A stretch of DNA of 64,000 bases from Macrostomum lignano. Taxonomy: Eukaryota. A program made the position numbers and the translations under genes. This document shows positions 47,497 to 64,000 of this stretch, one piece after another (position 1 is the stretch's first letter; the number at the start of each line of letters is the position of its first letter). The notes beneath the pieces were generated by a model. It searched no databases, had not been told where the DNA came from, and worked only from the letters and a program-made list of their open reading frames with translations. The stretch spans positions 61,740 through 125,739 of the forward strand of contig NIVC01001742.1 in the NCBI GenBank assembly GCA_002269645.1, given 5' to 3'.

Positions 47497-48573
47497 CCTA
47501 TAACACAAGCTAAGATTTCATATTGCAATTTATTTTTGTATCATTATATTGCACATTATAATTAATATAAACGATTTTTACCTAAGATTTATATTTATTC
47601 AACCATAATTTACAAATTATGAATCATGATTTGTAGATAATAAAATTTGTATTATGCAAAGGAATAGGGCCTAATCTAATGCTCATATTGGGCCATTCCA
47701 TATAATTATAGTCATAACATGACAGACTATTTTTACTTATAAAATGAAATCTAATAATAGAATATACTAAACCAATATTTTGAATAAAATATTATTTTGT
47801 CAAGAATATGTTTATAAAGTTTCATATAGATATCATCATTAGTATAGATGCTATTAAACCTTGAATGGCACTTATGGTCGTAACAACAGGATTTTTGACA
47901 TATAGAAACTAAAAGGTAAAAGTCTTATAACATTTTTCATTTTTGATATTTTGCAATAATTTTTTTTAATTTGACTAAGAACATCTTTAGAAGTCATACT
48001 CTTTTATTAAAATATATAATCTCAAAAAGGCAACAAAGATACAAAAGAAAAGGCAGCCTTATGGTTATAACATATTTTTTTCTGTCAATTCAGTAACTTT
48101 GAGGTACTATTATATTAAAAATATAATAGATTATATGGTTGCTAATGTTTTTATCTGATGATGCAAGTACTATAATTTTATATATAGTTTTTTTAACCTT
48201 CTAAAGCTTTCTATTTGTTTTTAAAAGGTACATAAACTTAATGATATCTTTTGCTTAGAAAATGTCCAATTTTTTACAAAAATAACTTTTTGCCAATTGA
48301 TAACATACTAATCCAACATTTTATCTTTTTTTTCTTAGATTGTATACATTACATATAAAAAAGATTTGGTAAAAAAATGGCTGATAAGGCAATGACAAGC
48401 AAAAATATTGACTTCTATTTTCCAAATATGTCCATCTTATATGGAATGGGCCTAAGAAAACAATTAGCAACTTTCTCCAAGCATAATACTTCATATGCAT
48501 TCCTTGGCTCAATACCCCAATATAATAAAGCTTTTTCTTACTGTCTTCAGCATTTACTTGCAGCCTCAGCACC

Positions 48574-48969
48574 ATGGCTAGGCCTGGAAAGCAGCGGCAA
48601 TGCTCTCTAGCACTCATATTGTGCACTGCAGTCTATTTAGCAGTCAGTCTGCTTGCCAAATTCGCTGACCTGCCACCCACAGTACTCGCTACTATACTGA
48701 TTGGCTACTTTTTCGTCATAACACAAATTACATTCCTTCTTACTGCCATTGACAGATGTCGAGCCAGAAATGGTGGATGGCGAGTCAGCAAACATGTCCT
48801 GTTTGTCTGTTCCTTCTACGGAGGTGCTCTCGGGCTGATTCTAGCAATGAAATTATGTTGTCACAAGACCTCAAATGAAAAAAGATTTTATAATCGTTCG
48901 CTAGTTTTTGTGCCACTCAATGCTATGTGGGTGCTTGTAATACAGCATTACATAATAGAAATTTATTAA
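48574..48969 (+). CDS. DUF1294/YsdA-like membrane protein, paralog 1 (131 aa)
   Basis: IDRCRARNGGWRVSKHVLFVCSFYGGALGLILAMKLCCHKT fits the DUF1294 pattern DK..A...WR.PE..L.....GG..G...AM....HKT. Confidence 0.75.
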   Translation: MARPGKQRQCSLALILCTAVYLAVSLLAKFADLPPTVLATILIGYFFVITQITFLLTAIDRCRARNGGWRVSKHVLFVCSFYGGALGLILAMKLCCHKTSNEKRFYNRSLVFVPLNAMWVLVIQHYIIEIY

Positions 48970-49021
48970 GGTTATGACACAGAGTAAATTAAAGTTTAAA
49001 ATACTTTTTTATATGCATCTT

Positions 49022-49274
49022 CCCGCTGGGAAAAAATTGCAGCGACGACAGGTTGATGACAACAAGTTGACGACAAGTCACCCTGTCGTCGCCGTGGCAG
49101 TCGACCAATCGGAGGCCGATAGAAAGCTGACAGCGAAGCGCATTTGGAAGCGCGCATTTACTTGAAAAAAATCATACTTATTTTCGTAAATCGATAGTAA
49201 ATCGACAGGGCTGTCGTCTCTAGCCTGTCGTCGCCTGTCGTAACCGTGTCAGTGCTGCAATTTTTCCCAGCGGG
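49022..49274. mobile_element. MITE with CCCG termini, CMC/EnSpm-like
   Basis: TIR cccgctgggaaaaa(a)ttgcagc; TT on both flanks. Confidence 0.75.
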
Positions 49275-49599
49275 TTGTTGTTTGTATCAGCCTTTATTGA
49301 ATAAAAAGCTGTTGAAACCCGCGGATTTTGAACGCGGGGAATTCCAATCCCCAGAACTATTTTTGCATGTATTCTGAAATCTGAGTCCATACTCAAAAAA
49401 AGTTGTTAATAGTTGGTAGGATAGAGGTAAACATAAAATGGAGTACATTCGTGTAAAATTAGGATTTGAAGCAAACATTTGATATTGTTGGCTGGGGCCT
49501 GGGATGCTGCGCAGAATGTCGGGCAATGTCTGTCTGACTCTTAAAGCATGCATTGGCAAACTCTGGCCTCTGCCTCTGACTCTCCCTACGTCCTTTGGA

Positions 49600-50160
49600 T
49601 TCTTTGAAACTTATATCTTCTCTTCTATTTCCTCTCTTATCTCTTGTCTCTCGTCCCTCGTCTCTCGTCTCTCTTCTCATCTCTTCCTTTTTTCTTTTCT
49701 CCTCTCTCCTTACTCCCCTCTTCTCTCGTATCCTCCCTCATCTCTCTTCTTTCATCTCTCCTATCTCATCTCTTCTCTCTACTTTTCTTTCTCCATTCCT
49801 CTCCTCTCTCCTCTCTTCTCTCCCGTCTGCTCTCTCATCTCTCTTTTCTCCTCTTTTATCTCTTCTCATTTCTCTTTGCTCTCTACTCTCTTCTCTCTCC
49901 CCTCTTTTCATTCCTCACTCTCCCTCTCTCAACACTTTCCTCTTCTCTCCTCTCAACTCTCTCCTATGTACCCGTACCCTCTTATCTCAACTCTTTCCTC
50001 GTTTTCTCTCTGTCCTCTCATCTCTTCTCTTCTTTCCTCTCTCCTCTCTCCCCTCTTCTCTCGTCTCTTCCCTCACCTCTCTTCTCTCTCGTCTTTGCTT
50101 TCTTATCTCTCCTTTCTCTTCTTTAATATTTTCCCTTATCTCTTCTCATTTCTCTCTGCT

Positions 50161-50204
<44 letters not shown>

Positions 50205-50245
50205 TCTCTCTCTTCTCCTCTCTACTCTCTTCCCTCTCCTTTTTT
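49600..50245. repeat. Polypyrimidine (CT-rich) low-complexity tract
   Basis: Almost only C/T on the plus strand. Confidence 0.92.
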
Positions 50246-50257
50246 GCACTTTTAAGT

Positions 50258-50384
50258 AAGAAGACTTGAGTCTAGGAAATTTTAAGGTAGCCTAAGACAT
50301 TCTCCGTAGTGAGTTTATGGTGGGTGTAAAATTTGGTTTAATTTGGTTGAGCGGTTTGGGAGTCCATAGCGATCAAATTTGTAC

Positions 50385-50453
<69 letters not shown>

Positions 50454-50475
50454 GTTTAGATTTTTATATGTATAG
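50258..50475 (+). mobile_element. Lep1/HINE-like non-autonomous Helitron with (ACAG)n
   Basis: aggtagccta...aaatttgg...ttggttgagcggttt...(acag)n...ttttatatgtataga layout typical of these elements. Confidence 0.65.
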
Positions 50476-51665
50476 AAAAAACGACTCATTTTTTAAATCT
50501 AAAATTAGTTTGTATGATGAATTTCTGTATTCCTCTCGCTAGTATTTCTAGCCTTGCTTATATATTTGCTGACTGTTTTTTGAAAATATCTATTTTGATG
50601 AAATTTAGCTGTCAACTTTTTACCTTTTAACAGAATTTTTTTCTTTTTTTCATTATCATAACTCAACGATATTTGAAGCATGAAAATATAAAACTCATCT
50701 TGAAGAGAATTTTTCCATCCAAAGTAACTTTGAGCTTCACTATTCAATATTTTTGCAATGGCGCAATGGCTACTAGATATTGTTGTCATTCAAAATCTGC
50801 AGTCTTTGGTTACTGGATTTATACTTATTGTCTATCACTCTGGCGAAGTTGGCCCTGACTTGCAATTCTCCAGTCTAAGTTTCTGTATCATCAGCAGTTC
50901 AATCTGCTATTTCTAGGTTAACAGCCACATTAACACTTCCTTTCTGCAAAATTTGGCTGATTATTTATTCTCGGTGTAACCTAGAATAGATGCACGAATT
51001 ATCTCAACCTTAATTATTAAAATTTCAGTTTGTAATAAGAATTTAAAGTCCAATTAACAAACACTGTTAATGAATAGTAGACAAAAAAGTAGACAACAAT
51101 TGGCCAGTTTTTCGGGCATAACTACGAGCTACAAACTATATTAGTAACCGAAATCCTGACATTTTTACCACTAACTGTTAAATAGCAACCAGCAACTTTT
51201 TTGTTTGCTCATCTTAATTTACAGTGTATTGTAGGCTAGACGCTAATTTCATCTAGTGAACTACAAATTCCAATTCGAAATGCTAAACTACATTTTTTCA
51301 TCTAGACTACTATACTGGTTTCCTATAAAAAATGTTTTAGCAGGACGGGAAGCTATCTCATCTTCTAGGCTTCAGCATTCCAAATGAACCAATTGTTTGT
51401 TTCGTCTGAGGTGGCACTCAAAAGTGTCTTTTCTCAACTGAATTTATCCTTAGCAAAAACCCATTTAGCGCTATACAAAATGTTCAATTTTGGCTAAATT
51501 TGTGCAGACAATAAAACTATAACCGCCAATTTTGAGTCCACCTCAAACAAAACAGATACTTACACATACTTCATTTTGTATCATTTGTTTCACACAAGTA
51601 TTTGCGTTACTAATAAACTAACCACCCTACCTAAATTGCATGCATGCCAAGTCAGTCTACTAAGC

Positions 51666-52331
51666 ATGGCCTGCTGCCAACCCGGAACCTGCTGCCAGTG
51701 CTCCATACTCTTGATCCTGTTCACCGGAATTTTTGTCACAGTCGCTGTTTTTGCCAAGTTTGCTGGTTTGTCCCACGTTGGCCTGGCTGTTCTACTTGGC
51801 GTCTACTTTGGCTTTCAGACACTTGTCGCATTTCTTCTGACCATGTTTGATAAATGCCAGGCAGAATCGGATGGTTGGCGTGTCACTGAACTGCTCTTGT
51901 ATCTGTGCGCCTTTTACTGCGGCTTCATTGGCGTCACCGTAGCTATGATAATCTGCTGGCACAAGGTTTGCAAGCGCGAATTTGTCTTTCCCTTGTTAAC
52001 TTTTGTGCCGATCAATGCTGCTTGGCTACTGATTGCTTTCTTAGTAGTTCCTATCAGTCTTCCCAGCTCTCTGTTCGTGACCAATGCTACAAATGCTATC
52101 AATGCTACTGCTCTCCTTGACAATGCTAAAAATGCTGTTCATCATATCAATGCTACTGCTCTCTTTGACAATGCTACAAATGCTATCAATGCTACTGCTC
52201 TCCTTGACAATGCTACAAATTCTATCAATGCTACTGCTCTCCTTGACAATGCTACAAATGCTGTTCATCATATCAATGCTACTGGTGTCCTTGGCAGCCT
52301 AGTTGCTCACATTTTCCCCACCGCCGGATAG
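51666..52331 (+). CDS. DUF1294-like membrane protein, paralog 2 (221 aa, NAT-repeat tail)
   Basis: DKCQAESDGWRVTE..LYLCAFYCGFIG..AM..CWHK; paralogous to 55130 and 57202; conserved ctactaagcATGGCC start context. Confidence 0.82.
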   Translation: MACCQPGTCCQCSILLILFTGIFVTVAVFAKFAGLSHVGLAVLLGVYFGFQTLVAFLLTMFDKCQAESDGWRVTELLLYLCAFYCGFIGVTVAMIICWHKVCKREFVFPLLTFVPINAAWLLIAFLVVPISLPSSLFVTNATNAINATALLDNAKNAVHHINATALFDNATNAINATALLDNATNSINATALLDNATNAVHHINATGVLGSLVAHIFPTAG

Positions 52332-52792
52332 AAGGAGACATTAACCTTGAACTGATAGTGCCAAATTTCATGTGTTTCAACTCGAGTTGGAAAGTTTTAT
52401 TGCAGCAACTTTACAGCTGAATTTTACTATTTAATGTCATATTATTCGATCAAGTTTAACCTGTTTACACAATTTACTGTATGCTACTTCAACATCGATT
52501 GATTCGAATAAATCCAATAAGGTTTGATGTTTTGGAAAATTTTAGAATCTTTACATAACAAATCTGTTATAAAAATGTTTTATAATTTTTTTAATTTAGG
52601 TTTTATTTTAAGCGTACGGATTTTGTGTTCTCAAAAAAGCTACGTTTGAACTTAAATGTCTTTTTCTGAAGCTTTACGCAAACCCTAATTAATATACGCT
52701 TGGCTCGTATCTTCTGTACTCTAATCTTTGAATACACAAACTGTTTTGACTCTGATTTCTTTTATTTCACATTAATAGCCTATTAGTAATAA

Positions 52793-53580
52793 GCTAGCAA
52801 TCTAGTGCCCCCTTCCGGGCGCCCAATAAGCAAGGAACAAAAATTATTCATGCAAATCCATTAAGAAGCATGAATCAATTCCTTCTTCAGTTTTATAAAT
52901 CACCTTATTCGAGTAAAATTGTCACGGAGAATGATATTTGCTATGAATATCTTTTTTTCTTAAAGTAACAAAGATAACAGGCATTCTCCCTAGCAAGCAT
53001 CCTCCAGATAGCAAGCATCCCCCCAAATACAATTGCAAGCATCCCCACAAGTAGCAAGCATCCCCCCCCCCCCAAATACAATAGCGAGCATCCCCCCAGA
53101 TAGCAAGCACCCCCCAAAAACAATAGCGAGCATCCCCCAGATAGCAAGCACCCCCCAAAAACAATAGCGAGCATCCCCCAGATAGCAAGCACCCCCCAAA
53201 AACAATAGCGAGCATCCCCCAGATAGCAAGCACCCCCCAGAAACAATAGCGAGCATCCCCCAGATAGCAAGCATCCCCCCCAATACAATAGCAAGCACCC
53301 CTCAATACAATAGCAAGCACCCCCAAATACAATAGCAAGCATCCCCCCAATACAATAGCAAGTATCCCCCAAATACAATAGCAAGCATCCCCCCAATACA
53401 ATAGCAAGCACCCCCCAAATACAATAGCGAACATCCCCCAGATAGCAAGCATCCCCGAAATACAATAGCAAGCATCCCCCAAATACAATAGCAAGCATCC
53501 CCCAAATACAATAGCAAGCATCCCCCCAGATAGCAAGCATCCCCCAAATACAATAGCAAGCATCCCCCCAGATAGGAAGC
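52793..53580 (-). mobile_element. Unit-specific ~790-bp insert with agcaagcatccccc minisatellite, possibly Helitron-like
   Basis: Absent at the homologous spot (~56260) of the next unit; minus-strand gcccggaagggggc hairpin followed by actag. Confidence 0.35.
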
Positions 53581-53627
53581 AAGAGTAGGTCTGTACTGAA
53601 TACAAAATACCGAAATACTCTTAATAT

Positions 53628-54095
53628 CCCGCCCATGTTTGTAACAAGCCGTAACTGTGACAAGAATCGCAAAAAACTCACGACACTAGTGACTCTAGCG
53701 ACTCTGGGATAACTCTTCTCACTTGTTAGCGTCTTAAAACTACTGCAATGCGACAGAGACTAACTAGCTGTATTTATAACAGTTAAATAGAGCTGTTATA
53801 AATGCGAAATGTGTGCGATTATTTTTCATAAAGTGACGCTGATGCGCTTTTGACGCAACTCAGTGATTCTACAGCGACTGTGGCACACCTCAGATGAGAC
53901 TCAACGGCCCCAGAGCCATTATACCTACAGAAGCGCCCCAGAGTCGCAGACAATTAAAAACCGCTTAAGTTTACTCTTGAATTTTACCGTGACATCTTGT
54001 CCTCTTAGAGTCGCCTAGAGTCACTTATTTCCTATTCTACCTGTTTTACCTGCAACGACTCTGGGACACTTCTTGGCCTAAGTATACGCAGATGT
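53628..54095 (-). mobile_element. One-end-truncated relative of the 28714 MITE
   Basis: Shared gtgactctagcgactctggg and gactctgggacacttcttggcctaag segments. Confidence 0.6.
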
Positions 54096-55129
54096 ACGAG
54101 CTATTCGGACATTCTTGGCCACTCACTGTCATCTTACAACCGGCCACTTTTTCGTCTACTTTCAGTTTACAGTGTAACTAGTTCAGACTAGACGCCAAGT
54201 GCTTTTGATTCTCTATAAAAATTTCTTAGTGAGACAGCAAGTTCTCTGCTTTGTTGTTAAACGGGATTGGAATTCGGGGCAACCCGCGGATCAGCCCAGA
54301 GAAGGGCTCTGCCGCTGGATTTTGTAGGGGGCCCTACTACCAAGGGCTGAAGCCCGAGAGGCCCAGATTGGGACCAGAACTCAAGGCCTGGTAAAGCCTT
54401 ATTGGATGCTACTACGAGCATCGTAACCCAAGCCTATAGACTAAGACACCGCCAACCCACAGTGCCACAAGGGCATTTCACTACCCGGCTCTAATAAGCT
54501 TGGAATATCTGAGTAGCGGTCCGAGAGCGGAAAGACCCGAGTCTACGGAAAAGGCTAAGTTATTGGAGCGAGTCTGGACAGCTTATTGCGATGGGCGAGT
54601 CTCCCATCAGGTGGCCAAGAACCTCTCCTATAGGGCTGCGAGCCTCAAAGCTTTTTCAGTATCCAGCTCTAATAAGCCCAGGCCAAGGGGTTGGTGAGGA
54701 GCACAAGGAGCAAAGGGACCACCGGACTCAGCCGGTTTTCCCCGATTCGGGACGAACTCATTCTTCAGGACACCAATCCACTGAGAGTGATGGGAGCCGA
54801 GACACAAGAAGCATAAATTCAAAGACTGAATGGCTACAAGGCCGGGATAAAACACAAAGCTAAAAGTGTGTATTTCGTTTAAGGTAGCACCCATAAGTGT
54901 CAGTTTTCTTAACCAAATTTGTTTATAGCAGAACTTCCATTTAGTGCTATACAAAATAGTCATTTTTGGCTAAATTTGTGCAGAAAGTAAAACTATAGCG
55001 ACCAATTTTGAGTGCAGCTCAAACAAAACAGATACTTACTTCATTTTGTGTCATTTGTTTCATACCAGTACTTGCTTTACTAATAATTTGCGGCCCTACT
55101 GAAATTCCAGCAAAATCTGTCTACTAAGC

Positions 55130-55669
55130 ATGGCCTGCTGCAAACCCGGAACCTGCTGCCAGTGCTCCATACTCTTGGCCCTGTTCACCGGAGTTTTTGT
55201 CACAGTCGCTGTTTTTGCCAAGTTCGCTGGTTTGTCCCACAATGAGCTGGCTGTTCTACTTGGCGTCTACTTTGGCTTTCAGACGCTTCTCGCATTTATC
55301 CTCACTTCCATTGATAAATGCCAGGCACAATCGGGAGGGTGGCGTGTTGCAAAAGCGGCCTTGTATCTGTGCGCATTTTACTGCGGCTTCCTTGGCGTCA
55401 TCTTAGCCATGCTAATTTGCTGGCACAAGGTTAAAAAGTGCGAATTCGTCACCTGTTTGCTAATTTTTGTGCCGATCAATGCTGCTTGGCTACTGATTGC
55501 TTTCTTAGTAGTTCCGATCGGTCTTCCTGGCTCTCTGGTCATGACCAATGCTACAAATGCTACAGATGCTATCAATGCTACTGCTCTCCTTGACAATGCT
55601 GAAAATGCTGTACATCATATCAATGCTTCTGGTGTCCTATTTGCTCACATTTTCCCCGCCGCCGGATAG
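55130..55669 (+). CDS. DUF1294-like membrane protein, paralog 3 (179 aa)
   Basis: DKCQAQSGGWRVAK..LYLCAFYCGFLG..AM..CWHKVKK. Confidence 0.85.
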   Translation: MACCKPGTCCQCSILLALFTGVFVTVAVFAKFAGLSHNELAVLLGVYFGFQTLLAFILTSIDKCQAQSGGWRVAKAALYLCAFYCGFLGVILAMLICWHKVKKCEFVTCLLIFVPINAAWLLIAFLVVPIGLPGSLVMTNATNATDAINATALLDNAENAVHHINASGVLFAHIFPAAG

Positions 55670-55753
55670 AAAGAGACATTAACTTTGAATTGATAGTTTC
55701 AACTCGAGTTGAAAATTTTTTTGAAAAATTGAAAAAAAAATTACCATGTTTGT

Positions 55754-55913
55754 GCGCAACCTTGGGATTCACCCGGCCGTTTCTATTGGCAACACACACA
55801 TGTATGTCGCTATTGGACAGAATAGTAGTCACGTGACTGCTCTCAGCCAATAGCGACTTACATGTGTGTGTGTGTTGCCAATAGAAACGGCCGAGTGATT
55901 CCCAAGGTTGCGC
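55754..55913. mobile_element. Palindromic MITE (copy 2)
   Basis: gcgcaaccttggga...tcccaaggttgcgc foldback; absent at the homologous position after paralog 2. Confidence 0.82.
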
Positions 55914-56303
55914 GCGTATTTTAGTTTAACCTATTTACAAAATTTACTGTATGCTGCTTCAACATCGACTGATCCGAATAAATCCAATAATGTTTAATGT
56001 TTTGGACGATTTTAGAATCTTTACATAACAAGTGTTTGTTACAAAATAGTTTAATTCTTTTTAAAATTTGGATCCTATTTTAAGCATACGGATTTTGTGT
56101 TCTCAAAAAAGCTACGTTTGAACTTTAATGTCTGTTAAGATTTACGCAAACCCTAATTAATATACGCTTGGCTCGTATCTTCTGTACTCTAATATTTGAA
56201 TACACAAAAATGTTTTGACTCTGATTATTTTTATTCAATATATTGATAGCCTTTTGGTAATAAGAGTAGCTCTGGACTTGGAATACAAAATTATTCATAA
56301 TTT

Positions 56304-56715
56304 CCCGCCCATATTTTTAACAAGCCGTAACGGTGATAAAAATCACAATTCACTAGTGACTCTAGCGACTCTGGGACAACTCTTGTCACTTGGTAACGTC
56401 TCAAACGACTGCAATGCGATGGAGAGGCGACTGTTGAGGGCAACTTGAGGCACAAACGCGAAAAAGCTATCCAAGAGTCGTGAGCGCTTAACTGCACGCC
56501 TCAGATAAGACTCTACGTCTCCAGAGTCGTTATACATGCAGAAGCGCGCCAGAGTCGTTTCAGAGTCGCAGACAATAAAACGCCTCAAGTTGACTCTCGA
56601 CTTTTACTGTGACATCTGGTCCTTTTAGAGTCGTCTAGAGTCACTTCCTTCCAATTTCACCTGTGTTACCTGCAACGAGTCAACGACTCTGGGACGCTTC
56701 TTGGCCTAAGTATTC
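56304..56715 (-). mobile_element. One-end-truncated relative of the 28714 MITE, duplicated with the gene unit
   Basis: Colinear with 53628-54095. Confidence 0.6.
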
Positions 56716-57201
56716 AGACGTACGCGCTATTCGGACATTCTTGGCCACTCACTGTGAACTGACAACCGGCCACTTTTGGTCTACTTTTAATTTACAGTGT
56801 AGCTAGTTTAAACAAGACGCTAAGTTCTTTTGGTTCCCTATTAAAATGCCGTAGTAAGATGGGAATTTCTCTGCTTTTAGCACTAAATTCCCAATACGAG
56901 CGTATCTCATTTTCCAGACTTCGTAGTTCCAAATGAAGCAAAGGTGTGTGTTCCGTTTGAGGTAGCACCCATAAATGTATCTTTCGTAATTTGTTTATAG
57001 CAAACTCAATTTAGTGCTTTATACAAAATGGTCGATTTTGGCTATAAATACATGCAGAAAATGCAACTATAAGCACAAATTCGAGTCCAACCTCAAACAA
57101 AACCAATACTTGCTTCATTTAGTATCATTTGTTACTATATAATTTCTTTACTAATAAAGTACGGCCCTACTGAAATGCATGTTCCAGTCAGTCTACTAAG
57201 C

Positions 57202-57714
57202 ATGGCCTGCTGCAAACCCGGAACCTGCTGCCAGTGCTCCATACTCGTGGTCCTGTTCACCGGAATTTTCGTCACAGTTGCTATTGTTGGCAAGTTTGCT
57301 GGTTTGTCACACAATGAGCTGGCCATTCTACTTGGTGTCTACTTTGGCTTTCAGACACTTTTCACATTTATCCTCACTTTCATTGATAAATCTCAGTCGG
57401 AATCGGGAGGTTGGCGCGTTGCAGAAGCGGCCCTGTATCTGTGCGCCTTTTACTGCGGCTTCCTCGGCATCATCTTAGCTATGATAATTTGCTGTCACAA
57501 GGTTAGAAAGGGCGAGTTTATCATCTGCTTGCTAATTTTTGTGCCGATCAATGCTGCTTGGCTACTGATTGCTTTCTTAGTAGTTCCAATCGGTCTTCCC
57601 GGCTCGCTGGTCATGACGAATGCTACAAATGCTATCAATGCTACTGCACTCATTGATAGCCTATTCGTTCACATTCTCCGTCCGGCCGGATGGAATGAGA
57701 CAACCTTGAATTGA
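57202..57714 (+). CDS. DUF1294-like membrane protein, paralog 4 (170 aa)
   Basis: DKSQSESGGWRVAE..LYLCAFYCGFLG..AM..CCHKVRK. Confidence 0.85.
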   Translation: MACCKPGTCCQCSILVVLFTGIFVTVAIVGKFAGLSHNELAILLGVYFGFQTLFTFILTFIDKSQSESGGWRVAEAALYLCAFYCGFLGIILAMIICCHKVRKGEFIICLLIFVPINAAWLLIAFLVVPIGLPGSLVMTNATNAINATALIDSLFVHILRPAGWNETTLN

Positions 57715-60194
57715 TGATGTCAGTAGGTAACTTGGGTTAGAAAGTTTTTGAGACAGTTGTACGGTGGAATCATTCGAGCAAATTTACCTATTTAAGCGGA
57801 ATTACTGTTTAACACTTCGATTTTTTTACTATTCTAATCGATTTGAAAGCAAAAAAATTTTAAATCTTCAAGTTTTTATTCTAAGTCGTTTTTCTGGTGG
57901 TAAAGTTGAATTGATTTTGGCTCATTTTAAGCGTATGGTGTATGGTGCAAGGATAATACTTTACTTGAACTTTTTGTTTTTTCTTTGAGAAAACATATAT
58001 GTATTAAAACAAGTACTCTGTTACAGAGATAAACAAAAAGTAATCTGTTAATCCTTGAATAGTAAAAATTTGAATCTGACTTTGTTTTGGTTTAATAAAA
58101 TTGATAGCTTATCTTATTGCTTCTTGGCCTAGGTACCGTTTCCATCAGGTAGTAAAATACTTCTACAGTTACTAGGCACTGAATTGCTTATCAATATAGT
58201 GTTTGAGTCTCGACTATTAGACTACCCGGTGTGTACATGCCACGATTAGAAGGGACGTTTTCATTTAAGACTGCAAATCCAAAACAGCGAGCTCTGTTGT
58301 GTAAGGCTCCCATTCGTGTTAGCGCGGTTTTTGCCTCAGTAGCTATAAGTTGTTTGTTGGCTGATAAGTTGAATATGCAGTAAATTCTGCATCGACTCGC
58401 CACTCAGATTGATTACGGTCCCAGACATTTAAAAGCTGCGTCGTTTCCGTCGCACAACATCCAATTGGTGCATTTACGTTAAGTCCATGCCAATCTGTGC
58501 GCATCGACCTCGCATTTGGCTATACCTTCCTAAAAAGTTCACAGTTTGGCACTTTGCTTACAAAAATGTTTGAGTCGACTATTAGACTAGCGTGTGTAAT
58601 GCCCACGATTAGAAGCCTTTTTTGACTGCAAAAAACAGCGAGCTCTGTTTTTTATCCTTTTAGCCCCGTTGTGGCTTTGCTGTACTTTATAGTTTCGATG
58701 TAATAAATAGCATTAAGCTGGTGGTACTAACGACTGCAAGGTATCAGGACCCACCTGGCATGTTCCAGTCGTTAGAAGTTGGCTAGATAGTTGATGGCGT
58801 TTTCTCATTGACTCGCCAGCTTCGCATAATGCCGCAACCTGACGACGAGACAACACACTTCCAAGCTTGATTGGTCCCGGCAGTTTCGTCAACAACAGTC
58901 TCTGCGGTTTTTCCAATTGCAGTTGCTTCCTGATAATAAAATGAATCTACTCGCACTGAGTTAAGCCTATTTTTTGGTCATGTCTATGGCTCAAAAATGT
59001 GTTACCTTTGGGTTCGGCGTGCGCATGGCAAGAAAAATTGCTAGTTGCTCCAAAAATGAAACGCAAGGCACTGGCGTATTGCCGCGCTGCGTTATTACCG
59101 CGCATACTTATAGCAGGAATGCTTCCCTTCTACCATGATTGTCATTTTGCTTATACATGAAACTGCTGTCAGCAGTCGAATGTGGATGTTGTCATGCATG
59201 TGTTTTGCTTTAAATGAAACAGTTATCAACCTGTTGTGAAGCTCCAACTCTTAAGCCCTCAAGTTCCTTCGTTTTGACCATAATGGGAGTGCACTCAACT
59301 TTGATGTTTTGAAAGCTTACATGTATGGTGATTTCGTGATTAAGCTGACACGAAAATGACAATACATCACTTTTGCTACCTATTTTTAGATCGTTTGACA
59401 CATCCATGTTCGTTCACGCTACTAACCAAAGAGTAGTTGCAAAAATCTAAACAAGAGTGAACTATCTAGGGTTATAGTATCTGTGCTCTCTTCTTCATCC
59501 CCGATCTAATATGTATATGCATGTTGATTTTGGACTTCGCGTTGCTAAACCTCTCTGTAATGATTTTGTATCGAAATGGGATGATTTATGACGACATCGT
59601 CTCACAACCAGTATGCACTGAGGCGATTCTGCCACTCATTCCGCTGAAGCTCGATCCTGAGAACATAAAAGCGCGTCAATACTGTACGCAGACATGCTCA
59701 CACAGGGTGTTGCCCCCTTGGTGCTGGCGCCCTTGGATACTGCAAACAAATGATTACTCGTTTTGTATGTATGAGTATTAAAGTGACACTGAAAAAACTG
59801 GAGGATCTTAATATGGTACGCTCATATTTTCTACACAGCTCTCATTTTTACCTAATCAATCCACTTCAAGCAACTAAGCAACAGGTATTCTTTTCTGTTG
59901 CCTGTTATGTACGCGGTAGTTGCATCAGATTAAAAATTAAAAGTGAAAATTTAAAATGAAACGTATTTATACAGTGAAAGAAATTTGTCGTCTCCTTCCT
60001 TGCGTCTAGTCCTCGCTTTCCTCTACTCTTCTTTTTTTCTTCTTGGTTTTCTACTAGCTATAGACTACTGAATTTGACTCTAGGTCAGTCAAACAAGGGA
60101 TATCACATCCATGGCCAAGCCAATGAATGCAGCCCTCAGCCACTCTGTCGACCAAATAAATGAATCCATGGGGGTGATACCATATACGTATTCC

Positions 60195-60420
60195 CCAGTT
60201 GGTCGCGGCCATAGACTACAGAAACGTATTTATATCAAGTTGGTCGCGGCCATAGACTAGATAAACGTATTTATATCAAGTTGGTCGCGGCCATAGACTA
60301 GAGAAACGTATTTATTCCCCAGCTGGTCGCGGCCATAGACTACAGAAACGTATTTATTCCCAGCTGGTCGCGGCCATAGACTACAGAAACGTATTTATTC
60401 ACCAGTTAGTCGCGGCCACG
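60195..60420. repeat. ~41-bp tandem repeat (agttggtcgcggccatagactacagaaacgtatttat...), 5-6 copies
   Basis: Direct inspection. Confidence 0.88.
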
Positions 60421-62294
60421 GTAAATGAAACAAAGCAGGAAATCGCTTATATTCAATATTAAACTGAGCACAATCGGCAGCTTTTATTTGCGTAAAATGA
60501 AGGCTGTATTAACGATTAGTAGATATCCAACTTAATAAACACGTTTATTGATTGTTCTCGTATAGAAAAACAATTTATTCAATATAAATATATAATATAT
60601 TATTTTGAATGTCTAAAAGCATGCTACAGGAAACGTCGGTATTAGTGTTTTTTGTAACTTTCGGAGTGCTTGCACGGGTGTCGGGTGGATACACGACAAA
60701 ACAAATTTTAGCTAAGTAATTATAGCTAGCCAGAGAGCCAGAGTCTAATTAATGAAAGCGAACATAAAGCAAAGGTTATCGTTGCGAGGATTTGTAGCGA
60801 TATGTTTGGTAACTAAGCTATTCTGAATAGAAAAAAAACAATGTGCATCGCGAAGAGCATTTATAGCATCCTTGTATCGGACTCAACGGAGTAGTGTCTA
60901 GCAGAAACAGTGAAAGTTGAAAAAATCGACCTCTGTCTCGCAAATATTGCAGCCGATCGCCACCTACTTAAAAAAAAAACTAAACCATTCCGAAAAGCAG
61001 AACTTTTCTTTTCAAATAGAACGCGAATTAATTCACTTACAGTAGTACTAATCAGTAGTGACAAGGCGGTGCAACAGCGGCGCAACATTGGTCAACTTTA
61101 TCGCGAACAGTCGATATTAAAAAATCAACACAGGTACCTTCTTCAGTACAATTGCAAGCTTAAACATGTAAACAAACACACACACACACACCAGCACAAG
61201 TTGCAAGCCTGAGGAAGGGACTGGTCTAACGAAAGACTGTACGCAACTGAGCTCAAAGAAATGCTGCGCTTTGTATTGGATCTCCGTGTTGTTTAGACGG
61301 ACGTAGTATTGGTATTCTTCATTATTTTAATGACTCGATGATTTATAAATGGAAGTGGCACTTCACACTTCTCAGAGCTCAGTCCGCACTTTTTAAAACA
61401 CTTTTGTCTTCAATTAGCTGGTCATCTTGTGGAATGCAACAACCCTTGAATTCCGATAGCTGGAGGTCGTTTTGATGAATTCTATTTATGGTTTATGACA
61501 GTGCGTGTTGAGGAACTGCTAAATATTCTATGTTTATATATAGTAGAATGTTGTTTATAATAAATACTTAACAACAGGAGATATGGGGGCAGCTGGGCGA
61601 AGGGCAAGGCACAAGCTGAAAAGCGAGCCAATACTGCTGAATGATACGAGTTAGTCAAAAGTATATCAAAGGTTTCACAAACAATTGAAAAAAAATTAGA
61701 TAGATTTTTGTTAAAACTGCAGTTTCTCAAAATTAACTTCACTAACAAGCTTATCTGTTGCTAGTGTGTTCATGGGTTTGAAATAATTCACGTCTAAAGG
61801 TTTAGCGTATTAAAATGTGGGTCGTTAGGATTGATTTGAACTTTAAAAAACATAATTCGAAAAAGTTCTGCAACCATGCAGAAGCGTAAGTATGTGCCAG
61901 AAATGTGTGCAAAAGCAAATTCTCGTAAGTTAGACAACAACCACAAAAATAGGCTTACAATTAACAGGTTGTGCTGCTCAAAAAAGGATAATTCCCGGGA
62001 GTGCTAAATGAGCGTATGTACTTTGCTAGCCAGATGATAATAAGCGATAAAAAAGCAACAATATGCTCTGCTGAAAATCTGCATGATATCGGGCCAAGGA
62101 TCATAGGGATGTGTTAGCCACGGTGATGGTGGTCGATCAATCAAATCTATTAGTAAAACTTGTCTTGCAAAATGAGTTGATAAATATTGAATGCGTTGCA
62201 TAGTCTAGTAAATTTCTCTTTGGAAGAAACTATTCGTCCTCCCAATATGTTTTTGAGTTACTGCCGAAAAACAATATTTGCACAACCATCCTAT

Positions 62295-62438
62295 GGGGTT
62301 GTAGCCTATTGGTATATAGCGTACGACTCACGACTGAAAGGTCGGGGGTTCGATTCTCGACTCAACACCCGGAACGATTTGTGTCCTTGTGTCCAATAGG
62401 GGTAGTTGTAATCGCTTATTTATTATTTATTAGTTATT
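62295..62438 (+). mobile_element. Short tRNA-derived SINE or tRNA-like retrocopy
   Basis: A-box tagcctattgg, B-box ggttcgattct, (tta/ttta) tail, possible TSD atcctat (62288-62294 / 62439-62445). Confidence 0.6.
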
Positions 62439-62535
62439 ATCCTATCCCAAAAATAGTCGTTAAATTAAACTAGCTAATAAAATTCTGCAGAACATTTCCC
62501 AACACCCCAATTGCAGATCGATATGGTGAAGCCGC

Positions 62536-62680
62536 TTATTCGTCCTCCTTGCCTCGCTTGATGTTATTGACGAATTTGTTATAATCGAGTTTGCCAGCCG
62601 TGATGGGGGCCTCCTTCCAGGTCTGACGGATCTCGTCGTCGGTGAAATTGTCGCCCATGTTCTTCATCAGGTCGCGGAAG
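62536..62680 (-). CDS. Myosin regulatory light chain, last exon
   Basis: FRDLMKNMGDNFTDDEIRQTWKEAPITAGKLDYNKFVNNIKRGKEDE*; phase-2 join. Confidence 0.95.
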
Positions 62681-62902
62681 CTGTGAATGGATTTTTTTCA
62701 GTGCTTGTAAGACGTTTTTTGTTTGAATGAAAAAGGGGATTTCAAATTGGAAGAATAGTTGACCCCAAAATCTCATAGTGCTCATTGTCCGACGGCTGAC
62801 GACCGAGAGACGCGTACATATGCATGTGAGCGCACTCAAATATCGATTTCTCATCGAATTTCTATAGGTAGTTGAGTTCTAAAATCATCTTTAGCTACTC
62901 AC

Positions 62903-63159
62903 TACTCCTCGTCCAAGGAGCCAGTGTTGGCATCGTCGAACATCTTGAACGCGTTGCGCAGCGCGTCCTCGGAGTCTGAGCCGGTCAAGCGTTCACCGAA
63001 AATCTGCAGAAACATCGTGAAGTTCAGCGGTCCCGGTGACTCCTTCAGCATCTCCTGGAGCTCCTTGTCCGATGGCTGACGACCGAGAGACGCGTACATG
63101 TCCTTTAGGTCCTCCATGTCGATGAAGCCGTCGCGATTCTGGTCGATCATGGTGAACGC
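62903..63159 (-). CDS. Myosin regulatory light chain, EF-hand exon
   Basis: [18 protein letters not shown]...[21 protein letters not shown]. Confidence 0.96.
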
Positions 63160-63372
63160 CTGGAAAAATTTTGATCAAAAAGGTGCATAATATGCAGCTA
63201 ATCTACTTTCAGTAGATGATATGCAAAATCTACTCCCGGGCTTCGAATTCGGCAGTAGACACGATTTTGAACTTTTCTGCAGTTTTACGGGCTACCGGTT
63301 CGTCATAGAATTTTATAGCATTTCGAATGCCTGCGCAAATTTCGGATTGAATCAAAAGTATCAGACGCTCAC

Positions 63373-63456
63373 CTCTTTGAACTCCTGCACCTGCTGCTGC
63401 GGAAAGGCGGCGAATACGTTTGATGTGGCTCTCTGGGCCCGCTTGCCTTCTTTCTT
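63373..63456 (-). CDS. Myosin regulatory light chain, N-terminal exon (ATG exon lies beyond the window)
   Basis: KKEGKRAQRATSNVFAAFPQQQVQEFKE, containing the RATSNVF phosphorylation motif; 84 nt, ag/gt borders. Confidence 0.95.
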
Positions 63457-63479
63457 CTGAAAGAGACGATGGAAAGTGT

Positions 63480-63985
<506 letters not shown>

Positions 63986-64000
63986 TATCTGTCTATCTAT

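What the first reader, a model, noticed from the sequence alone, without database searches (positions are those of the whole stretch)
48574..57714. Tandem array of four intronless DUF1294/YsdA-like genes in an animal genome
Seen: four co-oriented single-exon ORFs share D[KR]...WRV...GG/CG..G..AM..HK. Paralogs 2-4 sit in duplicated ~1.5-3-kb units with conserved upstream and downstream DNA; paralog 1 is much more diverged. Known: DUF1294 is a function-unknown family described mainly from bacteria and archaea, with some eukaryotic members. Inference: possible horizontal acquisition followed by local amplification and diversification, forming a small uncharacterised membrane-protein system. Neighbouring spliceosomal genes and TEs argue against contamination.
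Basis: partly seen in the sequence, partly recalled or inferred. Interest (0 to 1): 0.72.

Follow-up and report, generated by a model that had tools for sequence, protein, structure and literature searches.

The report
Flatworm tandem DUF1294 membrane-protein genes
Four neighbouring genes in the flatworm Macrostomum lignano encode small membrane proteins of the uncharacterised DUF1294 family; their nearest relatives are jellyfish proteins, not bacterial ones, so this is a local gene-family expansion rather than a recent bacterial gene transfer.

Summary
Four co-oriented, uninterrupted ORFs (48574-48969, 51666-52331, 55130-55669, 57202-57714) all match Pfam DUF1294 at 49-56 bits (cutoff 25). 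Copies 2-4 lie in duplicated 3.5-kb and 2.1-kb DNA units; copy 1 is old (43-47% identity).

The window is Macrostomum lignano. Two NCBI gene models equal copies 3 and 4 exactly, and a second collinear copy of the locus keeps all four ORFs.

The recent-HGT reading is not supported.
- The nearest relatives outside Macrostomum are Rhopilema esculentum (jellyfish) proteins and jellyfish-like host contigs.
- They share an extra Cys-rich N-terminus plus helix, and the characters C-x-H-K and N-x-x-W. These occur in 19/19 flatworm and jellyfish-type proteins against 1/163 other hits.
- Prokaryote-like proteins reach at most about 41% identity over the core.

Copies 3 and 4 have RNA-based gene models starting near spliced-leader acceptor motifs and are under purifying selection (omega 0.25-0.31). 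Copy 1 evolves at the neutral rate. No copy 1- or copy 2-like protein appeared in the protein searches, which suggests they lack public models.

Copies 2-4 carry a C-terminal tail built from a 39-nt coding minisatellite rich in N-glycosylation sequons.

The biochemical function remains unknown; no solved structure matches. This is a modestly interesting variant of a known family.

The parts
48574..48969 (+). Copy 1 (W1): 131-aa DUF1294 protein. It is the old, divergent paralog and has no glycan-sequon tail.
   Evidence: The ORF is. Pfam gives 55.9 bits. It is 43-47% identical to copies 2-4. Between the two loci omega is about 2.2, and the CDS diverges by 6.3%, the same as its flanks at 5.7-6.4%. 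No copy 1-like protein was found in the protein databases.
48558..48563 (+). TTGCAG acceptor preceded by a polypyrimidine tract, 10 nt upstream of the copy 1 ATG. A second candidate, CTTCAG, lies 23 nt upstream.
   Evidence: The motifs were found. They match the published M. lignano spliced-leader acceptor motif [T/C]TNCAG (PMC8629364). TTGCAG is conserved in L001.
51440..51665 (+). Conserved upstream block of copy 2 (putative promoter/outron). It contains a TACTAAT branch-point-like motif but no [T/C]TNCAG acceptor.
   Evidence: The alignment of all upstream regions is.
51666..52331 (+). Copy 2 (W2): 221-aa DUF1294 protein with the longest sequon-repeat tail.
   Evidence: The tail holds 9 N-x-S/T sequons, against 2.55 expected from shuffling the tail (P = 0.0004). 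No copy 2-like protein was found in the databases.
52082..52262 (+). Coding minisatellite inside the copy 2 tail. The unit is 39 nt (13 aa, NATNAINATALLD-like), present about 4.4 times.
   Evidence: Tandem Repeats Finder. The homeologous copy L2 is 26 aa shorter in this region and stays in frame.
54916..55129 (+). Conserved upstream block of copy 3, including TACTAAT and the TTCCAG acceptor at 55105-55110, 19 nt before the ATG.
   Evidence: NCBI model P0318 starts (KICLLS-M...) immediately after this acceptor.
55130..55669 (+). Copy 3 (W3): 179-aa DUF1294 protein, identical to NCBI M. lignano model P0318.
   Evidence: Purifying selection: omega 0.25 against L3 (P = 1.6e-4). In the AF2 model the core blocks have pLDDT 82-93. 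The tail holds 4 sequons (P = 0.0012).
55546..55638 (+). Shorter version of the sequon-repeat region in the copy 3 tail.
   Evidence: (family D5).
56990..57201 (+). Conserved upstream block of copy 4, with a TTCCAG acceptor at 57182-57187, 14 nt before the ATG.
   Evidence: Model P0320 starts 18 nt before the ATG, so it begins near this motif but not exactly at it.
57202..57714 (+). Copy 4 (W4): 170-aa DUF1294 protein, identical to NCBI M. lignano model P0320.
   Evidence: The CDS diverges by 1.0% from L4, against 2.5-4.6% in its flanks. Omega against W3 is 0.31 (P = 1.7e-5).
51354..58121 (+). Segmentally duplicated region holding copies 2-4. Three collinear units start about 3470 and 2072 bp apart. 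Unit 2 is enlarged by an inserted minisatellite.
   Evidence: Direct-repeat families D3 and D6-D15. Cross-matches between units in the comparison with L001.

Best explanation
This is a lineage-specific tandem expansion, in the nuclear genome of Macrostomum lignano, of an animal-type subfamily of the DUF1294 (YsdA-like) small membrane proteins.

Shown:
- All four copies are bona fide DUF1294 genes.
- Copy 1 is old. Copies 2-4 arose recently by duplication of 2.1-3.5-kb units that carried their upstream control region with them.
- The whole array exists in at least two homeologous or haplotypic versions, with all ORFs intact.
- Copies 3 and 4 have transcript-derived gene models and evolve under purifying selection.
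- Copy 1 evolves at the neutral rate. No copy 1- or copy 2-like protein appeared in the protein searches.

Shown by comparison: the closest relatives outside Macrostomum are jellyfish proteins with the same architecture. That architecture is a Cys-rich N-terminus, an extra N-terminal helix, then the DUF1294 core carrying C-x-H-K and N-x-x-W. The array was therefore not seeded by a recent bacterial transfer into the flatworm.

Inferred mechanism of expression: the genes are matured by spliced-leader trans-splicing at [T/C]TNCAG acceptors 10-19 nt before the ATG. Copies 3 and 4 are probably cut from one polycistronic transcriptional unit.

Inferred protein design:
- The N-terminal cysteine cluster faces the cytosol and is a candidate palmitoylation site.
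- Helix 0 and helix 1 cross the membrane.
- The two conserved cationic loops (D-K...W-R and H-K) both face the cytosol. This makes the GG-containing helix 2 re-entrant.
- Helix 3 then exits the membrane.
- The K/R-free tail lies on the luminal or extracellular side, where its sequon repeats become N-glycosylated. Tail length changes through slippage of the 39-nt coding minisatellite.

The biochemical activity of the DUF1294 core is unknown. My best guess is a cytosolic-face site that binds an anionic ligand, either a lipid head group or a nucleic acid. The guess rests on the cationic conserved loops and on bacterial fusions to cold-shock domains.
For: Family membership and array structure.

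Species and second locus:
- The window is collinear with M. lignano NIVC01000010.1.
- All four ORFs are intact there.
- P0318 and P0320 are identical to copies 3 and 4.

Expression:
- The Mlig_3_7 gene models derive from RNA-seq. Their boundaries were set at mapped spliced-leader and poly(A) sites (PMC5730564).
- The acceptor motif is [T/C]TNCAG (PMC8629364). It is present at copies 1, 3 and 4.
- Models P0001, P0002 and P0318 start directly after the motif.
- A shared name prefix denotes one transcriptional unit: Mlig005746.g1 is CPSF73-like, while Mlig005746.g3 is a DUF1294 protein. L3 and L4 are Mlig029919.g1 and .g3.

Selection: W3/L3 omega 0.25 (P = 1.6e-4); W3/W4 omega 0.31 (P = 1.7e-5); pooled copies 2-4 omega 0.39 (P = 3.6e-4).

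Affinity to animal proteins:
- P0163 and P0203 are from Rhopilema esculentum.
- C-x-H-K plus N-x-x-W occurs in 14/14 Macrostomum and 5/5 jellyfish-type proteins, against 1/163 others.
- W3 and P0008 are reciprocal best cross-group hits.
- hhalign, flatworm against jellyfish profile: 122 of 130 columns, E = 4e-27, score 155, covering the N-terminus and helix 0.
- hhalign, flatworm against prokaryote profile: 85 columns, score 101.
- Only 17 of 1.84 billion representatives reach E <= 1e-10.

Tail: sequon enrichment against shuffles of the tail itself, P = 0.0004-0.02. The membrane core of copies 2-4 has no sequon, and the tail has no K/R.

Topology:
- Four hydrophobic segments; helices 9-32, 37-67, 75-97 and 104-127 in the model.
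- Both loops are net positive across 187 homologs: +2.6 and +3.5.
- Cold-shock-domain fusions place two TM segments before the DK motif.
- In the one tandem-domain protein where both motifs could be located cleanly (P0007), two TM segments separate HK(1) from DK(2).
Against: - The deep phylogeny is unresolved. In the 92-column NJ tree the flatworm-plus-jellyfish grouping has essentially no bootstrap support, and all-Macrostomum monophyly reaches only 0.53.
- The jellyfish profile is as similar to the prokaryote profile (score 162) as to the flatworm one. The link therefore rests on architecture and two discrete characters.
- Similarity restricted to the N-terminal 40 residues is not significant on its own (E about 0.06, against 0.3 for the reversed-sequence control).
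- I did not see spliced-leader reads. Trans-splicing and the polycistron are inferred from model boundaries and naming.
- Copy 4's model does not begin exactly at its acceptor motif, and copy 2 has no such motif.
- The gap from the copy 3 stop to the copy 4 acceptor is about 1.5 kb, above the 1-kb repeat-adjusted operon threshold used in PMC8629364.
- The re-entrant topology is inference. DSSP on the model shows helix 2 as a nearly continuous 23-residue helix with one break at G86, which equally fits a full span. I could not inspect coordinates.
- A second tandem-domain protein, the chytrid P0097, showed only one detected TM segment between HK(1) and DK(2), which does not fit the same-side argument.
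- GC3 of the four genes (0.39-0.53) is lower than in two neighbouring ORFs (0.68-0.71). With two comparators this is uninformative.
- No functional data exist for any DUF1294 protein in the searchable literature.
Confidence: 0.7

Rival explanations
1. One reading: a bacterial DUF1294 gene entered the Macrostomum lineage by horizontal transfer, became fixed, and was then amplified locally into this array.
For: - The family is overwhelmingly prokaryotic. The named hits outside the animal-type group are bacterial or archaeal.
- The genes have uninterrupted coding sequences.
- No other bilaterian protein appeared among the best hits.
- DUF1294 is listed as an HGT candidate in Dictyostelium (PMC3188802).
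- GC3 is lower than in two neighbouring ORFs.
Against: - The nearest relatives are jellyfish proteins with the same extra N-terminal helix, Cys-rich start and two derived characters.
- An unlinked, deeply diverged second M. lignano group exists: P0004, Mlig005746.g3 and related models.
- The best prokaryote-like hits score at most 77 bits, with about 41% identity at most over 77-89 aa, and there is no coherent donor clade.
- Scans of GTDB species genomes found nothing close, though the patterns used were narrow.
- The jellyfish-like homologs are also single-exon, so lacking introns is not specific to the flatworm.
Confidence: 0.1
2. The animal-type gene reached the macrostomorph lineage from a medusozoan cnidarian (or the reverse) by animal-to-animal transfer. 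This would explain its presence in jellyfish and Macrostomum but apparently not in most other animals.
For: - The distribution is patchy. Published Pfam counts show DUF1294 in Hydra, Clytia, Aurelia and Morbakka but not in Nematostella or Acropora (PMC7642931).
- Flatworm and jellyfish proteins share derived characters.
- From my own knowledge, not tested here: some macrostomorph flatworms (Microstomum) prey on Hydra and retain its nematocysts, which gives an ecological route.
Against: - Identity is only 30-40%, so any transfer would be very old and indistinguishable from vertical descent with losses.
- The tree gives no support for nesting one group inside the other.
- I did not check which subtype the Hydra, Clytia and other cnidarian genes belong to.
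- Other flatworm and spiralian genomes were not searched at DNA level.
Confidence: 0.05
3. Only part of the array is functional. Copy 1, and possibly copy 2, are unexpressed relics on the way to becoming pseudogenes. The 'array of four genes' is really two working genes plus two decaying duplicates.
For: - Copy 1 between the two loci shows 22 non-synonymous against 3 synonymous changes (omega about 2.2). This is not different from neutrality (P = 0.11) and is incompatible with omega = 0.25 (P = 6e-6).
- Its CDS diverges as fast as its flanks.
- No copy 1- or copy 2-like protein appeared in searches of 5.8 billion and 1.84 billion clusters, although both would have scored far above the hits listed.
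- Copy 2 lacks the [T/C]TNCAG acceptor.
- W2/L2 omega is 0.56, not significantly below 1.
Against: - Both copies keep intact ORFs in both loci, and the only indels are in frame.
- Copy 1 keeps every invariant family residue and a conserved acceptor motif.
- With 25 substitutions, survival of an ORF by chance is plausible (roughly one in three by my estimate), so intactness is weak evidence either way.
- An omega above 1 could instead reflect positive selection.
- Missing gene models may reflect low or tissue-restricted expression, or multi-mapping reads.
Confidence: 0.3
4. Contamination or assembly artefact: the DUF1294 ORFs come from a bacterial contaminant or a mis-assembly.
For: None beyond the mainly prokaryotic distribution of the family.
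Against: - The same four-gene locus occurs on a 2.39-Mb scaffold and on a 125.7-kb contig, and copy 4 also on a 73.8-kb contig, of the M. lignano assembly, with collinear flanks.
- A rhodopsin-type GPCR and a hAT-like ORF lie in the window, and an EF-hand gene lies in the flank.
- Flatworm splice acceptors are present.
- The proteins have eukaryote-style sequon tails.
Confidence: 0.01

Closest known systems
Pfam PF06961 / DUF1294 (B. subtilis YsdA-type small membrane proteins of bacteria and archaea)
   Same: - The core is shared: helix 1 ending in D-K, a W-R-[IV]-x-E loop, a GG..G helix, an [RC]-H-K-[TV]-x-K-x-x-F loop, and a third helix.
- All four window proteins exceed the Pfam gathering score.
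- The profile-profile match to named prokaryotic members is E = 2e-17 over 85 columns.
- Function is unknown in both.
   Different: - The flatworm proteins have an additional N-terminal Cys-rich segment plus a transmembrane helix.
- They carry Cys instead of Phe/Leu before H-K, and an N-x-x-W motif in the last helix.
- Copies 2-4 have a 40-91-aa N-glycosylation-sequon tail.
- They are nuclear genes with apparent spliced-leader acceptors, not operon genes next to infC-rpmI-rplT or fusions to cold-shock domains.
Jellyfish DUF1294 proteins (Rhopilema esculentum EP00795_P000698 and P015546; related proteins P0059 and P0008 on 0.43-1.8-Mb host-like contigs)
   Same: - Same overall architecture, aligned end to end (122/130 columns, E = 4e-27).
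- The N-terminus starts M-C / M-A-C-C with further cysteines.
- An extra helix 0, C-x-H-K and N-x-x-W are all present.
- The coding sequences are single-exon.
- One Rhopilema paralog has a sequon (NSS) in its short tail.
   Different: - Identity is only 30-40%.
- The two jellyfish-like loci examined hold a single copy within 20 kb, not a tandem array.
- There is no minisatellite-encoded sequon tail.
- The jellyfish proteins remain much closer to the prokaryotic consensus.
Spliced-leader trans-spliced operons of M. lignano (Wudarski et al. 2017; Ustyantsev and Berezikov 2021)
   Same: - The genes are co-oriented and adjacent.
- [T/C]TNCAG acceptors sit just before the ATG.
- Gene models begin there.
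- L3 and L4 carry the name prefix of one transcriptional unit.
   Different: - The spacing of about 1.5-2.8 kb exceeds the typical 100-bp to 1-kb repeat-adjusted operon distance.
- Each young copy also duplicated about 230 bp of upstream sequence, which could act as its own promoter.
- I did not examine spliced-leader reads.

Membership tests
DUF1294 (Pfam PF06961) | Score above the curated Pfam gathering threshold (25 bits) | tested here: met
   The four proteins score 55.9, 49.0, 53.9 and 55.9 bits, covering profile positions 2-55 of 55 (3-52 for copy 1).
DUF1294 (Pfam PF06961) | Conserved motif set: D-K after helix 1, W-R loop, G..G helix, H-K loop followed by F | tested here: met
   D62, R72, L78, G86, G89, H99, K100 and F106 are invariant across 28 flatworm, jellyfish and prokaryotic sequences; K63 is nearly invariant. 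The same columns are invariant among the four window copies.
DUF1294 (Pfam PF06961) | Three hydrophobic helices forming the core | tested here: met
   Hydropathy peaks at residues 40-58, 78-96 and 110-128, plus an extra one at 12-30. AF2 helices span 37-67, 75-97 and 104-127, with core-block pLDDT of 82-93.
Horizontally acquired (bacterium-to-animal) gene | Closest relatives are prokaryotic rather than from other animals | tested here: not met
   - The best cross-group matches are jellyfish-type proteins, and they are reciprocal.
- The profile-profile score is 155 against jellyfish and 101 against prokaryotes.
- Derived characters are shared by 19/19 flatworm and jellyfish-type proteins, against 1/163 others.
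Horizontally acquired (bacterium-to-animal) gene | Gene tree nests the animal genes within a donor clade with support | tested here: inconclusive
   An NJ tree with 300 bootstraps on 92 columns gives no support for nodes deeper than the Macrostomum clade. No ML software was available.
Horizontally acquired (bacterium-to-animal) gene | Physically integrated in host chromosome (not contamination) | tested here: met
   The locus is collinear on multi-hundred-kb to Mb M. lignano contigs. A GPCR, an EF-hand gene and a transposon-derived ORF flank it.
Horizontally acquired (bacterium-to-animal) gene | Absent from related animal lineages | tested here: inconclusive
   No other bilaterian protein appeared among the top hits. 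However, medusozoan cnidarians have the family. Other flatworm genomes could not be searched at DNA level with these tools.
SL trans-spliced gene / operon of M. lignano | [T/C]TNCAG acceptor at the mature 5' end | tested here: met
   TTGCAG lies 10 nt before the copy 1 ATG, TTCCAG 19 nt before copy 3, and TTCCAG 14 nt before copy 4. Copy 2 has none. Models P0318, P0001 and P0002 start right after the motif.
SL trans-spliced gene / operon of M. lignano | RNA-seq reads carrying the 35-nt spliced leader at that site | not testable with these tools
   Support is only indirect. The annotation pipeline (TBONE) cut gene boundaries at mapped spliced-leader sites.
SL trans-spliced gene / operon of M. 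lignano | Adjacent genes less than 1 kb apart (repeat-adjusted), or within one transcriptional unit | tested here: inconclusive
   - The distance from the copy 3 stop to the copy 4 acceptor is about 1.5 kb, including a MITE-like element of about 180 bp.
- L3 and L4 are named g1 and g3 of one unit, Mlig029919.
- The naming convention was checked on a single example.
N-glycosylated membrane protein | N-x-S/T sequons enriched in a segment predicted to be luminal or extracellular | tested here: met
   The tails of copies 2, 3 and 4 hold 9, 4 and 3 sequons, against 2.55, 0.69 and 0.82 in shuffled tails (P = 0.0004-0.02). The core of copies 2-4 has none, and the tail has no K/R.
N-glycosylated membrane protein | Demonstrated glycan attachment | not testable with these tools
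   This needs PNGase F or Endo H treatment, or mass spectrometry.

The most novel reading that the evidence does not exclude
An animal-type DUF1294 lineage is shared only by medusozoan cnidarians and macrostomorph flatworms. Two origins are possible. It could be an ancient metazoan gene lost from nearly all other animals, or it could have moved between cnidarian and flatworm, possibly through predation on cnidarians. In Macrostomum it has become a palmitoylated cell-surface glycoprotein. Its glycan-bearing tail varies in length through a coding minisatellite, which would suit a role at the animal-environment or animal-microbe interface.
Probability: 0.08. Interest if true: 0.65.

Novelty: new variant of a known kind. 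Interest (0 to 1): 0.35.

Why it matters
DUF1294 is a large family: about 2,900 cluster representatives matched at E <= 0.001. No member has a known function, and no solved structure is related by sequence or detectably similar in fold.

A genetically tractable animal carries expressed, selectively constrained copies. M. lignano has transgenesis and RNAi, so it offers a eukaryotic handle on the family.

The animal-type features narrow the topology and suggest concrete biochemical tests. These features are the cytosolic Cys cluster, the extra helix and the sequon tail.

For evolutionary genomics, the case is a caution. A 'bacterial' Pfam domain in intronless tandem genes looks like recent HGT. 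Once jellyfish homologs are found, it turns out to be an older, patchily retained animal lineage.

The 39-nt coding minisatellite that adds or removes N-glycosylation sequons is a tidy example of repeat-driven variation in a protein tail.

Tried and rejected
- **Trees.** The Biopython NJ bootstrap timed out. My first numpy NJ bootstrap was corrupted by NaN distances from saturated pairs, so I discarded its support values and repeated the run with capped distances.
- **N-terminal homology.** An HMM built only from the flatworm N-terminal 40 residues gave no significant hit. P0008 matched at the right place with E = 0.06, against 0.32 for the best reversed-sequence control. The N-terminal homology claim therefore rests on architecture and the end-to-end profile alignment, not on that test.
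- **Fold search.** A Foldseek search of the AF2 model against the PDB gave nothing below E = 3.
- **PDB sequences.** A profile search of PDB sequences gave zero hits at E <= 1.
- **NCBIfam.** The scan gave only noise far below cutoffs.
- **GTDB genomes.** The second matched 49 pattern sites, none confirmed by tblastn. The patterns were Macrostomum-specific, so this is a weak negative.
- **Literature.**
  - Searches for DUF1294, YsdA and PF06961 found no functional study.
  - The E. coli 'ysdA' papers among the YsdA hits concern tisAB. As far as I know that is unrelated; I did not open them.
  - Searches for Mlig029919 in main texts and in two supplement sets found no expression data.
- **Spurious hit.** P0005 (1232 aa, 9 matched stretches) is a translated repeat and was excluded from the analyses.
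- **Composition.** GC3 against two neighbouring ORFs was judged too thin to bear on HGT.
- **Donor site.** I considered a cis-spliced 5'-UTR intron in place of trans-splicing. A possible GT donor upstream of copy 3 is not conserved in copy 2, so I favour trans-splicing, but I cannot exclude the intron.

Full report

Yes. The region holds four co-oriented, stop-free ORFs: 48574-48969 (131 aa), 51576/51666-52331, 55130-55669 (179 aa) and 57175/57202-57714.

- Each ORF matches Pfam PF06961 (DUF1294) at 49-56 bits, against a gathering cutoff of 25, with E = 5e-15 to 7.5e-13.
- tblastn finds exactly four copies in the 64-kb window.
- Copy 1 is 43-47% identical to the others. Copies 2-4 are 82-84% identical over the 130-aa core.
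- Direct-repeat analysis shows collinear similarity upstream, inside and downstream of copies 2-4. Start-to-start spacing is about 3470 and 2072 bp.

The homologous start codons of copies 2 and 4 are the MACC ATGs at 51666 and 57202.

**2. Whose genome is it?**

It is Macrostomum lignano.

- The closest database proteins are M. lignano hypothetical proteins.
- The window is collinear at 86-96% identity with scaffold NIVC01000010.1 of assembly GCA_002269645.1.
- That second locus (L001) carries all four ORFs intact, in the same order.
- Two further NCBI M. lignano proteins, P0318 and P0320, come from a 125.7-kb contig. They are identical to copies 3 and 4, including the window's own residues upstream of the ATG.
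- The window is therefore M. lignano itself, and L001 is a homeologous or haplotypic copy. A third version of copy 4 exists on a 73.8-kb contig.
- This fits the published redundancy of that assembly (PMC5730564).
- A single-exon rhodopsin-type GPCR (21125-22405, minus strand; 220 bits) and a hAT-like ORF lie in the window. An EF-hand gene lies in the flank.

Contamination is excluded.

**3. Are the genes expressed, and how?**

The Mlig_3_7 gene models are RNA-derived. Transcriptional units were assembled from RNA-seq and cut into genes at experimentally mapped spliced-leader (SL) trans-splice sites and poly(A) sites (PMC5730564). The published SL acceptor motif is [T/C]TNCAG, placed at the outron/exon junction (PMC8629364).

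- Copy 1 has TTGCAG 10 nt before its ATG.
- Copy 3 has TTCCAG 19 nt before its ATG.
- Copy 4 has TTCCAG 14 nt before its ATG.
- Copy 2 has no such motif.
- Models P0318 (copy 3), P0001 (L3) and P0002 (L4) begin in the codon directly after that motif.
- The model for copy 4 (P0320) begins a few bases further upstream.
- About 230 bp upstream, including a TACTAAT branch-point-like motif, is conserved among copies 2-4 in both loci.

The names also point to co-transcription. L3 and L4 are named Mlig029919.g1 and .g3. Mlig005746.g1 is a CPSF73-like gene, while Mlig005746.g3 is a DUF1294 protein. A shared prefix therefore marks one transcriptional unit holding different genes. On that basis L3 and L4, and presumably copies 3 and 4 here, are probably cut from one precursor RNA.

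Two limits apply. I did not see the reads themselves, so this is inference from annotation. No copy 1- or copy 2-like protein turned up in either large protein search, although both would have scored far above the hits listed. I read that as no public model for them.

**4. Selection**

I computed Nei-Gojobori estimates with binomial tests.

| Comparison | omega | Test result |
|---|---|---|
| W3 vs L3 | 0.25 | purifying, P = 1.6e-4 |
| W3 vs W4 | 0.31 | purifying, P = 1.7e-5 |
| Copies 2-4 pooled, between loci | 0.39 | purifying, P = 3.6e-4 |
| W2 vs L2 | 0.56 | not significant |
| W1 vs L1 | about 2.2 | not different from neutral (P = 0.11); excludes omega 0.25 (P = 6e-6) |

- The W1/L1 comparison rests on 3 synonymous and 22 non-synonymous changes.
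- The copy 1 CDS diverges by 6.3% between loci, the same as its flanks (5.7-6.4%). The copy 4 CDS diverges by 1.0%, against 2.5-4.6% in its flanks.
- Copies 3 and 4 are constrained genes. Copy 1 shows no recent constraint, so it is either relaxed or under positive selection. Copy 2 is ambiguous.
- Gene conversion among copies 2-4 could blur the between-locus comparisons. dS between loci ranges from 0.008 to 0.145 across the array.

**5. Where do the genes come from?**

An exhaustive HMM search of 1.84 billion cluster representatives gave 2,933 hits at E <= 0.001 but only 17 at E <= 1e-10. Identification of the best hits:

- P0004 and its relatives are a second, unlinked M. lignano group.
- P0163 and P0203 are from the scyphozoan jellyfish Rhopilema esculentum.
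- P0059 and P0162 are similar to P0163 by eye. They come from 1.2-1.8-Mb high-coverage contigs.
- P0008 comes from a 430-kb gene-sparse contig.
- P0136 comes from a marine eukaryote transcript catalogue.
- P0097 comes from a chytrid fungus.

The jellyfish-type proteins have the same design as the flatworm ones.

- They share an M-C or M-A-C-C start with further cysteines, an extra N-terminal helix, and then the DUF1294 core.
- The character pair C-x-H-K plus N-x-x-W (last helix) occurs in 14/14 Macrostomum and 5/5 jellyfish-type proteins. It occurs in 1/163 of the remaining top hits.
- W3 and P0008 are reciprocal best cross-group hits.
- Profile-profile alignment of flatworm against jellyfish covers 122 of 130 columns end to end (E = 4e-27, score 155).
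- The same comparison against named prokaryotic members covers 85 columns (score 101).
- A profile of the jellyfish-type group separates its own members (136 bits or more) from everything else (87 bits or less).

Published Pfam counts report DUF1294 in Hydra, Clytia, Aurelia and Morbakka, but not in Nematostella or Acropora (PMC7642931).

The evidence against a firm flatworm-jellyfish clade should be stated plainly.

- The 92-column NJ tree supports copies 2-4 (0.97) and, weakly, all Macrostomum (0.53). Nothing deeper has support.
- N-terminal similarity alone is not significant.
- The jellyfish profile is as close to prokaryotes as to flatworms.

My conclusion is that the array was not seeded by a recent bacterial transfer into Macrostomum. 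It expands an older animal-type lineage shared at least with medusozoans. Whether eukaryotic DUF1294 ultimately came from bacteria remains open. It is listed as an HGT candidate in Dictyostelium (PMC3188802).

**6. What are the proteins like?**

The AF2 model of copy 3, built from a 28-sequence alignment, has mean pLDDT 74. The core blocks score 82-93. Helices span residues 9-32, 37-67, 75-85/87-97 and 104-127, and the tail is disordered. Hydropathy analysis gives the same four segments.

Copies 2-4 end in a 40-91-aa tail.

- The tail has no K or R.
- It holds 3-9 N-x-S/T sequons, significantly more than shuffles of the tail's own residues give (P = 0.0004-0.02).
- The membrane core of copies 2-4 has no sequon.
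- The tail is encoded by a 39-nt (13-codon) minisatellite. Its copy number differs between paralogs and between the two loci, always in frame.
- An unidentified eukaryote-like homolog (P0016) has four sequons towards its C-terminus, and one Rhopilema paralog has one in its tail.

For orientation I used bacterial relatives.

- Both conserved loops are strongly cationic across 187 homologs: mean net charge +2.6 and +3.5.
- Cold-shock-domain fusions usually place two hydrophobic segments between the cytoplasmic domain and the D-K motif.
- In the tandem-domain protein P0007, two segments separate the first H-K loop from the second D-K loop. The chytrid P0097 showed only one, which does not fit.

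Together with a luminal sequon tail, the simplest topology is as follows.

- The N-terminus is cytosolic, with a candidate palmitoylation cluster.
- Helices 0 and 1 span the membrane.
- Both cationic loops are cytosolic, with the GG helix re-entrant between them.
- Helix 3 spans the membrane.
- The tail lies outside.

This is inference. A four-span N-out/C-out topology is the alternative, and the model's nearly continuous helix 75-97 is compatible with it.

**7. Function**

No function is known for any DUF1294 protein.

- Literature searches found only genome-context mentions.
- No PDB sequence or fold matches.
- NCBIfam adds nothing.

My best guess is speculative. The conserved D, K, W-R, H and K residues may form a cytosolic-face site for an anionic ligand, either a lipid head group or a nucleic acid. 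That would be consistent with cold-shock-domain fusions in Proteobacteria.

**8. Verdict**

The family assignment, the tandem duplication and the non-contaminant status are all correct. The proposal of horizontal acquisition followed by amplification is not supported as a recent event.

The locus is a lineage-specific expansion of an animal-type DUF1294 variant, with a repeat-encoded glycosylation tail. Two copies are clearly functional and expressed, and one or two are doubtful.

It is a new variant of a known, function-unknown family. It is worth a note for people working on M. lignano or on DUF1294, but it is not a striking discovery. Interest: 0.35.

Noticed in passing
window 21125-22405 (- strand): A 426-aa uninterrupted ORF encodes a rhodopsin-family GPCR (Pfam 7tm_1, 220 bits). 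It is a second single-exon membrane-protein gene in the window.
   Followed up: partly
window 32463-34274 (+ strand): A 603-aa ORF has weak, sub-threshold matches to a Spin-doc-type zinc finger and DUF4371. This looks like a hAT/ZMYM-like transposase-derived gene or a transposon remnant in a GC-rich (53%) patch.
   Followed up: partly
window 55740-55920; related copies at window 35010-35189 and L001 10658-10839: A near-perfect palindrome of about 180 bp (a MITE or foldback-like element) sits just downstream of copy 3. It recurs elsewhere in the window and at the homologous place in the second locus.
   Followed up: partly
window 52991-53581: A C-rich minisatellite (23- and 41-nt units, about 14-26 copies) lies between copies 2 and 3. 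It accounts for part of the extra length of unit 2. It is present with a different copy number in L001 and creates long spurious ORFs on the minus strand.
   Followed up: partly
window 49616-50240 and 50385-50453: A 600-bp imperfect CT-rich microsatellite, followed by (ACAG)17, lies between copies 1 and 2. The CT tract generates three overlapping Ser/Leu-rich ORFs of 160-251 aa that are not genes.
   Followed up: no
window 48452-58121 vs 58667-64000, compared with L001: Divergence between the two copies of the locus is uneven. It is about 1% in the 3' flank but 2-8% across the DUF1294 array, and dS ranges from 0.008 (copy 4) to 0.145 (copy 3). This suggests gene conversion, recombination between homeologs, or locally elevated mutation in the array.
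   Followed up: partly
other M. lignano loci (P0004, P0152, P0153; Mlig005746.g3, Mlig005748.g1, Mlig029206.g1): A second, unlinked DUF1294 group in M. lignano has a roughly 50-aa N-terminal extension. Its gene shares a transcriptional-unit name with a CPSF73-like gene (Mlig005746.g1). An older UniProt model fuses it to a DUF862 protein.
   Followed up: partly
P0155 vs P0008 (L002 10001-10405; Logan contigs): A 167-aa variant of the 134-aa jellyfish-type protein P0008 continues past the genomic stop (…CYK|QASIF…). This hints at a 3' splice variant or an allele without the stop.
   Followed up: no
window 12669-14642 (+ strand): This is the longest ORF in the window (657 aa) and has no Pfam match. 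The region has strongly negative GC and AT skew, so the ORF may be repeat-derived rather than a gene.
   Followed up: no
P0005 (ENA, 1232 aa): This was one of the top-scoring hits in the exhaustive search. It is a translated tandem repeat (nine matched stretches to profile positions 3-54), not a DUF1294 protein. It is a false positive driven by Cys/Leu-rich repeats.
   Followed up: yes
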